A stretch of 64,000 nucleotides of DNA. Source: Perkinsus chesapeaki ATCC PRA-425. Its lineage: Eukaryota; Protista; Perkinsozoa. The notes under the pieces were generated by a model, which did not search any database, was not told where the DNA came from, and saw only the letters and a list, made by a program, of their open reading frames with translations. The stretch covers positions 23,035 to 87,034 of the forward strand of contig JAAPAO010000083.1 in assembly GCA_013115145.1 (NCBI GenBank). The letters run 5' to 3'. Of the stretch, positions 38,257 through 41,200 are shown one piece after another; position 1 is the first letter of the stretch, and each line of letters starts with the position of its first letter. A program made the position numbers and the translations under genes.

Positions 38257-41200
38257 ATGACTGAGCGTAAGGTTATGAATAAATACTACCCTCCGGACTT
38301 CGATCCGTCCAAGCTCTTACCGATGAGAATGGTCAAGAAACCGAGAGTGGAACAGAAAGGTGAGGGAACTTTCTGACACCTCTAGCTGCTGAGTTGAGCA
38401 TCAGGCCCGAAGTGCATGAATATCCGAATGATGCTGCCGTTCTCAATGTGTTGCAGTCACTGCGGAGAGTATCTTTACATTGCAACCAAGTTCAACAGCC
38501 GGTAATCGGAAGGTCTCTGGTTCGATTCCTGGTAAGGACATCTTTTTAGGTGCCAAAAACTGCCAGAGAAGAGCTCTCTAGGATTAAACGTTTATAGATT
38601 CTATGGGAAATGCAAGCATTGTTTAGGTGAGAATATACCAGTTTTGGAATATACGTATGAAGTCCTTTAGGAAGACGACGAAAAATTAGGGAAGTTTCAC
38701 AAAAATTGAGGAAATTTCGCGAAGGAAATTCCCCTAAAACTAGGAATTTTTTTGGTATCACAAGGCCATGATTTAGACGGAGCAAGAAAATCGCTGTTCT
38801 TCGCTAATGAGGTATATCGGATACACTGACGATGCATGGTTCAAGCTAAGATACATTTTTGTTATTTCTCAGGCGAATTCACCTTTCGCACTGATCCCGA
38901 GCACTCTGATTACGTCCTGGAGACCGGCGGCACACGAACGTGAGTTTCATGCGTATTGTGCGAATTGTTACATTTAATAGAATGAACAAGAACGACTGCA
39001 GGTGTTGCTATTAACAAAAGTATCCGGGTTGGCGAGTCAAAACGTAGCTCTGAGTAGCGGACAAGAAATTCAGCTTTTTTGCAACGGAAAACGAGGATTG
39101 TACGCAGTTGATAAGGAGCCATGAGAAAGGGAATATTCAAGCTAGTGAGAAATGGCGCTGTGCAGTGTGCAAGCACACGGTAACTTATGCTGCCGACGTG
39201 AGGCGAGTCAGGAGAAAACTCAGTGTCTTGGGGAGCAACTTGGAACCGTTTAGAGACGTTTCCGTACTCGGATCTCAACGAAGAGATTTTGCCCGTCAGG
39301 TACGAAGGCTTCAAGGATGCCGACTTCGCCGAGGCTGAGGTGTCCCATAGGAAAACTGGAGAAGAGAATGGTAGGTTTGAGGGTGTTGACAGTGGGTGTA
39401 GCTAGAGGTGTCAGAATCCGAAACTAAGGCCATGGAGAATAGGATTTATGATACAGCGGAGGAAATGCGACGGTTGGATGAATTGGATGAACTGAAGGCA
39501 GTTAATCGAAGGTGAGGGATAGTAGGGACGTGAAATGTTAACAAATACACTTCATTTTGCGTTCTTATTTTACCTATAGTAAAAAAAGAAAATCATTATT
39601 GGTAACCACTTTAAACGCTTCAAAACGCCACGGCACAAGAAGCCTGTAGGGTTGGAGGAATTGTCAGGGGGGGCAGAAGCGGTAGTGAAGGAAGCCACGG
39701 GAGGATGAGCTCCGCGTCACGACATGTATAAAAAGACTGGGGGGATATCTGAGCGGTTAGTGCAAATTTGTGCATGCCTCAGGCAAGCTCAGCGGGATGA
39801 TTTAATCTCCACAGCGTTGGACAAGCTCTTTGATGGTGACGTGTCGGGTCCTGGCGGCAGCAGTTCATCGGGTGTTAAGGGGGAGAAGAAGGAGGAGGAT
39901 GGTGTGAAGAAGGAGGAAGGAGATACAGAGGAGGAGGAGGCAAAGGCGAATGATAAAGGTGAGAATGGCGCAGATCATTATCTAATCTCAGGAACAAAAG
40001 TAGGGGCTGATGTGGTCGATTTCTTGTGTCATGAAACGTTTACGAGTCTCTTATGCCTACACAACATCAATTTTCGATTTTCTCAATTTTCGATTCCTTC
40101 AATTATAGCGTTTTCTCGCATTTGCCTGATAAACTTGGACGCGCAATGTGCTACTCGGGGATCAGAATTTCTTCGTAGAGCAGAGATATGAAGACCATTA
40201 TAGGAGATAATCATGTTACTAAGAAACTTAAAAAATATCCCCCTTGGAACGTTCGGTGGTCCTCTGTGGCTTCTTGCAAGTAACCATTTGAAAAGATTTG
40301 GTGGGCGATACTGGAATCGCTATTAAGGGGGATATTTCTGGTTTAAATTATAAGAATATGCGTTAATGAATATGCAATACACATATGAACAATGGCCTTG
40401 TGTTGCTTTAACTTTTCAACAACTACCATTCATTTACAACATCCTCTAACTAACTTTTGATCAATCGTGTCATTAATAGCATTTACATCCTTAGTGATCG
40501 ATGTTGGTATCAAATGTAATAATTTAGTAACGTACATAGTTTATTTGCCAATGCTCATACAGTATGAGTCATACTGATGGATGGACTGACGGTGCCTCCA
40601 ATGGATCTTCTGCGATTACCAAGGAAGGCAGTATCTGAGAATTTCGAACGGCGTCGCATGGTTTCGATTTGACACGTCATACGTTGGAACAGGAAATGTT
40701 TTTATTGGCTTAGATGCCGCTGTGGCCGAGGCAGTGTTCAAGGGTGACATAGAATGGGAACGGGTCGAAGTTATATCTGATTCGGAGGATGAGGATAAGG
40801 AAGAGGAGAAATCGTCGGCAAAGGAGGTGGGAAATATCGAATAACCTGGCATCTACTCTGTATCACATGAAGTGCTGGGCATCGTCTGTCATCATTATGT
40901 TATTACTCTCTCCTTAGCCCACGCCTCCACCAGTTCATATAGCCGATGAGATTGAGGCAGCAGCTGCTAAACGGAAAGCATCTATGCCACATATGGTATT
41001 CAAGGCAAAGCCTAAAAAGAAGGCAAAGGTTGCGACACCGACTGCTGAAGGTAAGGGGATCGCAGGTTCGAATCCCGGCTGGAGAACCTCGATATTAGTG
41101 CTTTCCATACTCGTTTCGAATGTCATTGATAGCACAGTCATCCGAAGTGAAGTATCTGGTGACCACTGGGCACTGCCCTGGATTCATACCTCTGTCAGTT

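What the first reader, a model, noticed from the sequence alone, without database searches (positions are those of the whole stretch)
38502..38549. A whole spliceosomal intron made from a tRNA 3' half
The intron boundaries are fixed by YJU2 conservation. The 48 nt read GT-AA-TCGGA-AGGTC (anticodon 3' side, stem strand, variable loop), a T arm (GGTTCGATTCC), TAAGGAC-A (acceptor strand and discriminator), TCTTTTT (terminator-like) and AG. The donor GT coincides with the last two bases of an NGT (Thr-type) anticodon, and the U-trailer serves as the polypyrimidine tract. Hypothesis: cleaved pre-tRNA 3' halves are captured into genes (retroposition or RNA-templated break repair) and survive because they arrive with splice signals. 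That would be a route of intron gain from tRNA, which I have not seen described. The alternative is that excised introns release functional tRNA fragments.
Basis: partly seen in the sequence, partly recalled or inferred. Interest (0 to 1): 0.85.

Follow-up and report, generated by a model that had tools for sequence, protein, structure and literature searches.

The report
tRNA-tail intron in Perkinsus YJU2
A 48-letter intron in a splicing-factor gene of the shellfish parasite Perkinsus chesapeaki is a worn copy of the back half of a tRNA gene. It is one of dozens of introns built this way, and its tRNA promoter motif has been kept across three deeply diverged species, which points to a source and use of introns that I found described nowhere.

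Summary
Confirmed. window:38502-38549 is a real 48-nt GT..AG intron (intron 2) of YJU2 in Perkinsus chesapeaki. Spliced-leader-capped mRNA contigs skip exactly these bases.

It reads as a tRNA gene from position 35 to the oligo-T terminator. It is the best match in the window to a profile of this genome's own tRNA 3' halves.

It is not a recent capture. The same intron, with homologous sequence, is present in P. marinus and P. olseni. Their four-fold sites are saturated, yet intron positions 7-29 (variable loop and B box) are 16-21/23 identical, against 2-10/23 in five control introns. The acceptor and trailer part has drifted.

Genome-wide, at least 38 non-tRNA elements carry GTAA in exactly this register; shifted registers give 1 and 3. 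A mirror class forms whole introns in antisense orientation, one of them proven inside a DnaJ domain.

A Thr origin is not supported. The mechanism of origin and the reason the B box is kept remain inferred; I think TFIIIC binding most likely.

This scan has noted the same phenomenon on other pieces of this genome. I found no publication describing it.

The parts
38257..38501 (+). YJU2 exons 1 (38257-38359) and 2 (38405-38501), with intron 1 (38360-38404) between them
   Evidence: Exon mapping against the P. marinus model gives AG/GT at every border. Transcript contigs skip intron 1.
38502..38549 (+). Intron 2, the finding: 48 nt, GT..AG, phase 2, made of a tRNA-gene 3' part
38502..38505 (+). 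Donor GTAA, at tRNA positions 35-38
   Evidence: Register test: GTAA placed 9 nt before AGGTC gives 71 genome hits (38 non-tRNA). Placed 8 nt before it gives 1 hit, and 10 nt before it gives 3.
38510..38529 (+). Core conserved between species: AAGGTC (variable loop) plus the B box GGTTCGATTCC (38519-38529)
   Evidence: These positions are invariant or nearly so in P. chesapeaki, P. marinus and two P. olseni haplotypes.
38530..38547 (+). Rest of the T-stem 3' strand, acceptor-like 7-mer, A73 and the T-rich trailer. Not conserved beyond being T-rich at its end.
   Evidence: 3'-anchored identity is 6/17 in all species pairs, the same as control introns.
38548..38549 (+). Acceptor AG
38550..38626 (+). 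YJU2 exon 3
41051..41098 (+). Candidate last intron of the same gene (48 nt if the first AG is used). It is also a tRNA 3' part in the same register; B box at 41065-41075.
   Evidence: HMM score 13.4 bits. The orthologous introns in P. marinus (L065:5876-5960) and P. olseni (L062:6978-7053) carry the same element. The 3' border in P. chesapeaki is not fixed.

Best explanation
Intron 2 of YJU2 is an old mini-intron whose entire sequence descends from the 3' part of a tRNA gene, from the anticodon loop to the Pol III terminator. It belongs to a dispersed family that is no longer mobile: about 300 non-tRNA elements under a strict motif.

Members of this family entered genes as DNA in either orientation. 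They survive where the spliceosome can remove them from their own ends. In sense orientation, GT at tRNA positions 35-36 is the donor, and the oligo-T trailer followed by AG is the acceptor region. In antisense orientation, the reverse complement of the anticodon loop (TTGTTAG) supplies the acceptor.

Shown here: the splicing, the tRNA likeness, the register, the family, both orientations, the age, and purifying selection on the variable-loop and B-box core.

Inferred: insertion as the origin, and the reason for the constraint. I take the most likely reason to be that the B box is still bound by TFIIIC, as an intragenic extra-TFIIIC-like site. I put that at about 0.4. A role on the RNA as a splicing element is the runner-up.
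For: Splicing: contigs of runs X1 and X2 skip exactly 48 nt, and one X1 contig carries the spliced-leader tail. Sister-species gene models agree.

tRNA likeness: and the B-box pattern gives 14 matches against 5.5 expected.

Family: the motif AGGTC-N3-GGTTCGA-N2-CC gives 380 hits against 1 in reversed controls. About four fifths of the listed hits are unique sequences. Of about 57 unique ones that I fetched, ARAGORN calls about one a tRNA.

Register: 71 hits against 1 and 3.

The 38 in-register elements: distance to the first AG is 44-60 nt in 32 of them; C72 in 24; A73 in 27; at least 3 T in the next 4 bases in 28.

Antisense whole introns: seven candidates of 47-53 nt. One splits a DnaJ domain exactly, with the flanking exons matching profile positions 4-33 and 36-63. 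GC skew puts the CTAAC class on the antisense strand in 6 of 6 cases.

Age and selection: four-fold sites are 34-42% identical between species. Intron 2 positions 7-29 are 21/23, 16/23 and 18/23 identical, against 2-10/23 in introns 1, 3, 4, 5 and 6; the binomial p runs from 1e-6 to 2e-3. All six orthologous copies of introns 2 and 9 keep GG(T/A)TCGANNCC.

RNA T-stem pairing is not kept, and the MFE is not below shuffles.
Against: - No TFIIIC occupancy data exist.
- AAGGTC, outside the B box, is also conserved, which a B-box reading does not explain.
- All four strong elements in this window are sense-oriented and sit at the intron's 5' end. That also fits a role on the RNA.
- I could not test conservation of antisense elements. 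The one antisense piece I saw in a long P. olseni intron has no counterpart in P. chesapeaki.
- Outgroup sampling for a gain is thin: Vitrella and one unnamed relative.
- No target-site duplications, terminal repeats or near-identical copies were seen, so the mode of insertion is open.
Confidence: 0.55

Rival explanations
1. Pre-tRNA 3' halves, cut in the anticodon loop, were copied into DNA (by retroposition or RNA-templated break repair) many times independently. They persisted because they arrived with splice signals.
For: The elements start in the anticodon loop (position 35 in the sense class, position 32 in the antisense class) and end at the T-run. C72 and A73 are kept better than positions 66-71. 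Both orientations occur, as expected for captured double-stranded filler.
Against: The AG (sense class) and the GT (antisense class) lie beyond the T-run, outside a Pol III transcript. Positions 39-43 share a strong consensus (N-CGAA) that no sampled real tRNA carries, and the T-stem shares a recurrent 51:63 mismatch. This points to one source family rather than many tRNAs. No poly(A) or duplications were seen.
Confidence: 0.2
2. The conserved core works on the pre-mRNA. It would be an intronic splicing element next to the 5' splice site, or its A58 would be the branch point of these 44-48 nt introns. On this view the B-box match is only a legacy of origin.
For: The copies in this window are in sense orientation, in fixed register with the donor. 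AAGGTC is conserved too. A58 lies 24 nt from the acceptor, a normal branch-point distance.
Against: The last intron keeps the core in P. marinus and P. olseni although it is 85 and 76 nt long there, so a branch-point role is not general. TTCGA does not fit yUnAy. Antisense whole introns exist with the same core.
Confidence: 0.2
3. A founder tRNA-like intron multiplied by reverse splicing (intron transposition).
For: Complete GT..AG units of nearly constant length with a shared consensus sit in unrelated genes.
Against: Reverse splicing gives sense copies only, yet an antisense class with the same core forms whole introns. Copies also lie outside open frames and in mixed-strand clusters.
Confidence: 0.07
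4. An older intron already stood here, and a tRNA fragment later landed in it. Alternatively the core is kept similar by conversion from the many tRNA genes rather than by selection.
For: Perkinsus has hundreds of tRNA genes (PMC3706591). The outgroup data are thin.
Against: The tRNA register starts at base 1 of the intron and fills it to the acceptor. The register is fixed genome-wide. An 11-20 nt core is very short for conversion.
Confidence: 0.08

Closest known systems
Introner elements of Micromonas and Aureococcus, and introner-like elements of fungi (from my own knowledge: Worden 2009, van der Burgt 2012, Huff 2016, Gozashti 2022; reviewed in PMC11282704, seen only as a title and abstract)
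   Same: A family of related sequences that each make up a whole intron in unrelated genes and bring their own splice signals. Both orientations can be spliced.
   Different: Here the unit is only about 45 nt. It derives from a tRNA gene 3' part and has no terminal repeats or target duplications that I could see. It is ancient, with no near-identical copies (the nearest matches 29/35). It also carries a Pol III promoter box under selection.
Extra-TFIIIC (ETC) sites: isolated B boxes that bind TFIIIC without Pol III (PMC3395662, seen only as a title and abstract)
   Same: A B box without an A box, conserved between species.
   Different: Known ETC sites are few and mostly intergenic. Here there would be hundreds, inside introns, and binding is untested.
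tRNA-derived SINEs
   Same: Dispersed copies of tRNA-like sequence with a B box.
   Different: SINEs keep the 5' part with the A box, a body and a LINE-type tail. These elements lack all three.
Introns created from captured filler DNA, for example organelle DNA at repaired breaks (from my own knowledge: Curtis and Archibald 2010)
   Same: Foreign DNA inserted into an exon and removed by splicing.
   Different: Those are single events from random fragments, not a family in a fixed register.

Membership tests
U2-type spliceosomal intron | GT..AG ends, and removal restores the reading frame | tested here: met
U2-type spliceosomal intron | Absent from mature mRNA | tested here: met
   Contigs from runs X1 and X2 skip 48 nt, and one X1 contig carries the spliced-leader tail. 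Their exons are 90-95% identical to the window, so they come from a close relative or another strain.
U2-type spliceosomal intron | Mapped branch point | not testable with these tools
   No raw RNA reads or lariat reads were available.
Functional tRNA gene | Full cloverleaf with a 5' half and an A box | tested here: not met
   ARAGORN and Rfam find nothing. The sequence upstream is conserved coding exon.
tRNA-derived SINE | A box plus B box, a body and a tail, and target duplications | tested here: not met
   The element is only positions 35-73 plus the T-run. No duplications appear in 38 copies.
Introner / introner-like element | Related sequences that each form a whole intron in unrelated genes | tested here: met
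Introner / introner-like element | Near-identical copies, or gains that differ between relatives (recent mobility) | tested here: not met
   Only one other place lies within 3 mismatches of 29 nt. The intron is shared by three species.
Extra-TFIIIC (ETC) site | B-box consensus without an A box, conserved between species | tested here: met
Extra-TFIIIC (ETC) site | TFIIIC occupancy without Pol III | not testable with these tools
   No ChIP data.
Locus producing tRNA halves or tRNA fragments | A stable small RNA from the excised intron | not testable with these tools
   No small-RNA run was listed. T-stem pairing is not conserved.

The most novel reading that the evidence does not exclude
The Perkinsus lineage gained hundreds of introns from a roughly 45-nt element derived from the tail of a tRNA gene. 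The element can be spliced out in either orientation, and its B boxes are now kept as functional intragenic TFIIIC sites. This would link the Pol III machinery to the architecture of Pol II genes.
Probability: 0.3. Interest if true: 0.9.

Novelty: new variant of a known kind. Interest (0 to 1): 0.78.

Why it matters
Where new spliceosomal introns come from is a long-standing question. The well-documented bulk source is transposon-like introners.

Here a very short piece of a tRNA gene makes complete, minimal introns in both orientations. It uses the anticodon loop and the Pol III terminator as raw material for splice sites.

The second point may matter more. A Pol III promoter box has been under purifying selection inside Pol II introns across species whose silent sites are saturated. 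That makes a concrete hypothesis testable in a transfectable parasite, P. marinus: intragenic TFIIIC sites, or a new kind of splicing element.

Tried and rejected
- Rfam and ARAGORN found no tRNA in the window or in L002. This says little for a half gene.
- Thr cognate: rejected. The sampled tRNA-Thr genes (AGT, CGT, TGT) have T73 and different anticodon and acceptor stems. Every sampled real tRNA matches the intron at only 16-23 of 35 positions, less than other elements do (median 24, best 29).
- Val(AAC) cognate: CTAACAA-CCGAA elements exist, but none is a tRNA gene and there are only 8 places.
- Dada transposons, which target tRNA genes in P. marinus, insert in the A box. They do not explain pieces that start in the anticodon loop.
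- tRNA-like RNA structure: rejected.
- An open-frame test around candidate introns did not discriminate.
- The nearest copy, L002, is not in an evident reading frame.
- A second copy of the last-intron element in P. olseni is part of a 302-nt local duplication, not a sign of mobility.
The Centaurea gene has no intron in this region.
- The look-up of sequencing runs listed no run on record as RNA that holds the stretch. The two small runs it added by species label nevertheless held spliced contigs.
- Conservation of an antisense whole intron (the DnaJ gene) could not be tested, because every exon is too short to fetch orthologues by reference.

Full report
WHAT IS THERE

The window is G000:C3315:23035-87034 of Perkinsus chesapeaki. 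The neighbouring pseudouridine-synthase ORF is 100% identical to NCBI FOL47_010582, on a contig of the right length.

The finding lies in YJU2/CWC16 (PF04502). I mapped the P. marinus gene model onto the window. That gave exons 38257-38359, 38405-38501, 38550-38626, 38873-38939, 39300-39370 and 39415-39511, each bordered by AG and GT.

Intron 2 is 38502-38549: 48 nt, phase 2. Read-through meets TAA in the second codon. After removal, the 170 residues encoded by exons 1-6 differ by at most two residues among P. chesapeaki, P. marinus and two P. olseni haplotypes. They are colinear with Vitrella YJU2. The NCBI models XP_002778870 (P0008) and the P. olseni model P0004 splice at the same point.

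Contigs of two small runs filed under the same species label have exons 90-95% identical to the window. They skip exactly introns 1 (45 nt), 2 (48 nt, GT..AG) and 5 (44 nt), and join exon 3 to exon 5 through a diverged exon 4. The loose 5' end of one contig starts with CCATCTTGGCTCAAG. These are the last 15 nt of the Perkinsus spliced leader PmaSL1 given in PMC3101222. The contigs are therefore trans-spliced mRNA, and splicing of the 48 nt is shown.

IS IT tRNA-LIKE BEYOND CHANCE?

A profile HMM built from 19 distinct 3' halves of real tRNA genes of this genome scores the intron 15.2 bits (E 0.001), the best hit in the 64 kb. Four hits reach 10 bits or more, against none in 20 Markov shuffles, whose best was 8.4 bits. 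B-box-like 11-mers number 14 against 5.5 expected.

Two of the four strong hits are introns of YJU2 itself: intron 2 and the last intron, from 41051. The other two lie at the start of an ETF-dehydrogenase intron (28657) and in a Misato-like gene on the minus strand (about 61800). All four are in sense orientation.

A GENOME-WIDE FAMILY IN A FIXED REGISTER AND IN BOTH ORIENTATIONS

The strict motif AGGTC-N3-GGTTCGA-N2-CC occurs 380 times, against once in reversed controls. By my reading of the 200 listed rows, about one fifth are multicopy real tRNA genes (Thr, Asn, Ile) and the rest are unique sequences. Of about 57 unique ones that I fetched, ARAGORN called about one a tRNA.

GTAA placed 9 nt before AGGTC, at tRNA positions 35-38, occurs 71 times. 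About half of these are tRNA-Thr genes and 38 are not tRNA genes. GTAA placed 8 nt before occurs once, and 10 nt before three times.

The 38 have exon-like sequence upstream and no 5' half. In 32 of them the first AG comes 44-60 nt after the GT, and 15 are 44-48 nt long. C72 is present in 24, A73 in 27, and at least 3 T in the next 4 bases in 28.

A hand tally of positions 35-36 in listed non-tRNA elements that have AA at 37-38 gave GT 17, AC 9, GC 7 and all others 5 or fewer (n = 64; approximate).

Elements with the loop CTAACAA turned out to lie on the strand of negative GC skew in 6 of 6 loci. In-register GTAA elements lie on the positive strand in 9 of 13. In this window the coding strand has positive skew.

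Read in reverse complement, seven such elements are bounded by GT(A/G)...TTGTTAG (or, in one, TTCTCAG) with lengths of 47-53 nt. Removing one of them (L147:1501-1548, minus strand) joins two exons that match the DnaJ profile at positions 4-33 and 36-63.

The same tRNA tail therefore makes whole introns in both orientations. The anticodon loop supplies the donor in sense orientation (xGTAA). Its complement supplies the acceptor in antisense orientation. This argues for insertion as double-stranded DNA and against pure reverse splicing. It also means that the apparent anticodon is shaped by splice-site selection.

AGE AND SELECTION

The orthologous intron is present in P. marinus (L065:3687-3734, 48 nt, with a GC donor) and in P. 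olseni (L062:4742-4788 and L063:2846-2892, 47 nt).

| Comparison between species | Identity |
|---|---|
| Four-fold degenerate sites, YJU2 exons 1-6 | 34-42% (24/57, 21/62, 22/59) |
| Intron 2, positions 7-29 | 21/23, 16/23, 18/23 |
| Introns 1, 3, 4, 5 and 6, positions 7-29 | 2-10/23 |
| Intron 2, 3' part | 6/17, the same as controls |

The binomial p for intron 2 runs from 1e-6 to 2e-3. The invariant columns spell AAGGTC.C.GG.TCGAT.CC.

The last intron behaves alike: 19/23 between P. marinus and P. olseni. P. chesapeaki has lost three bases of AGGTC but keeps the B box. All six copies fit GG(T/A)TCGANNCC.

T-stem pairing is lost in P. marinus. Predicted folds differ between species, and MFE values are within about one SD of shuffles. 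A tRNA-like RNA is therefore unlikely.

COGNATE tRNA

None was found. All sampled tRNA-Thr genes have T73 and other stems. Real tRNAs match the intron at 16-23 of 35 positions. Other elements match better: median 24, best 29 for the copy at G000:C876 (L002/L084), which shares the acceptor-like 7-mer. That copy lies outside any evident reading frame, in a 3-kb cluster of eight tRNA-like pieces on both strands.

The elements share N-CGAA at positions 39-43 and a recurrent 51:63 mismatch. This suggests one source family.

ORIGIN

Vitrella YJU2 has no intron at this site, and an unnamed relative with 64% identity is intronless. Dinoflagellate DNA was not obtainable. A gain in the Perkinsus lineage is therefore likely but not proven. 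I saw no target duplications, terminal repeats or near-identical copies.

FUNCTION

The conserved core coincides with the TFIIIC recognition box, and RNA pairing is not kept. The core is also kept where the intron is 76-85 nt long. For these reasons I favour a DNA-level role of the ETC kind, at about 0.4. A pre-mRNA element is next, at about 0.2. Conservation of AAGGTC and the sense orientation of the local copies keep the RNA reading alive.

LITERATURE

Six full-text searches and two papers read in part gave no description of tRNA-derived introns or intronic B boxes in Perkinsus. The library does not hold most subscription papers.

Other agents of this scan have reported the same class on other pieces of this genome. 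I used their notes only as leads and tested the claims on this locus.

VERDICT

This is a new variant of the introner idea, with an unexpected selected Pol III motif.

Noticed in passing
window:38371-38387 (+) and window:39400-39416 (reverse complement): The 17-mer TTCTGACACCTCTAGCT lies in YJU2 intron 1. Its reverse complement forms the 3' end of intron 5 and supplies the acceptor AG. Both copies are kept in P. olseni. Genome-wide there are 400 places with at most 1 mismatch, against 1 in the control, on both strands. This looks like a second abundant short intron-associated element.
   Followed up: partly
L065:3687-3734 (P. marinus): The orthologous intron uses a GC donor (GCAAG). It is in frame without a stop, so retention would add 16 residues.
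   Followed up: no
window:28657-28699 (+): An intron of the ETF-dehydrogenase-like gene starts with a tRNA 3' part in the same register (GTAAT...), including A73 and TTTTT. This intron is longer, at least 87 nt.
   Followed up: partly
window:61765-61819 (-): A tRNA 3' part (HMM 15.0 bits) lies in the Misato-like gene. There the only in-frame GT near its start is the one in the variable loop (AG|GTC).
   Followed up: no
L002 = G000:C876:9056-12084: Eight tRNA-3'-half-like pieces on both strands lie within 3 kb, without an evident reading frame. One of them is the closest relative of the YJU2 intron.
   Followed up: partly
L062:6956-7257 and L062:9247-9548 (P. olseni): A 302-nt local duplication (96.7% identical) covers the YJU2 3' end, including the tRNA-like last intron. 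The duplicate has a T-to-C change in the B box.
   Followed up: partly
L066, L067 (metagenome and Logan contigs): An intronless YJU2 that is 64% identical to the Perkinsus protein sits on very gene-dense contigs, with about 60-nt spacers.
   Followed up: no
L062:1671-1697 (-): An antisense tRNA-like piece (13.5 bits) lies in a roughly 340-nt intron of the P. olseni pseudouridine-synthase gene. It has no counterpart in the P. chesapeaki intron.
   Followed up: partly
L065:3104-3589 and L064 (3' end of the contig): Intron 1 of P. marinus YJU2 begins with a long (GTA)n microsatellite, so the donor GT is part of the repeat.
   Followed up: no
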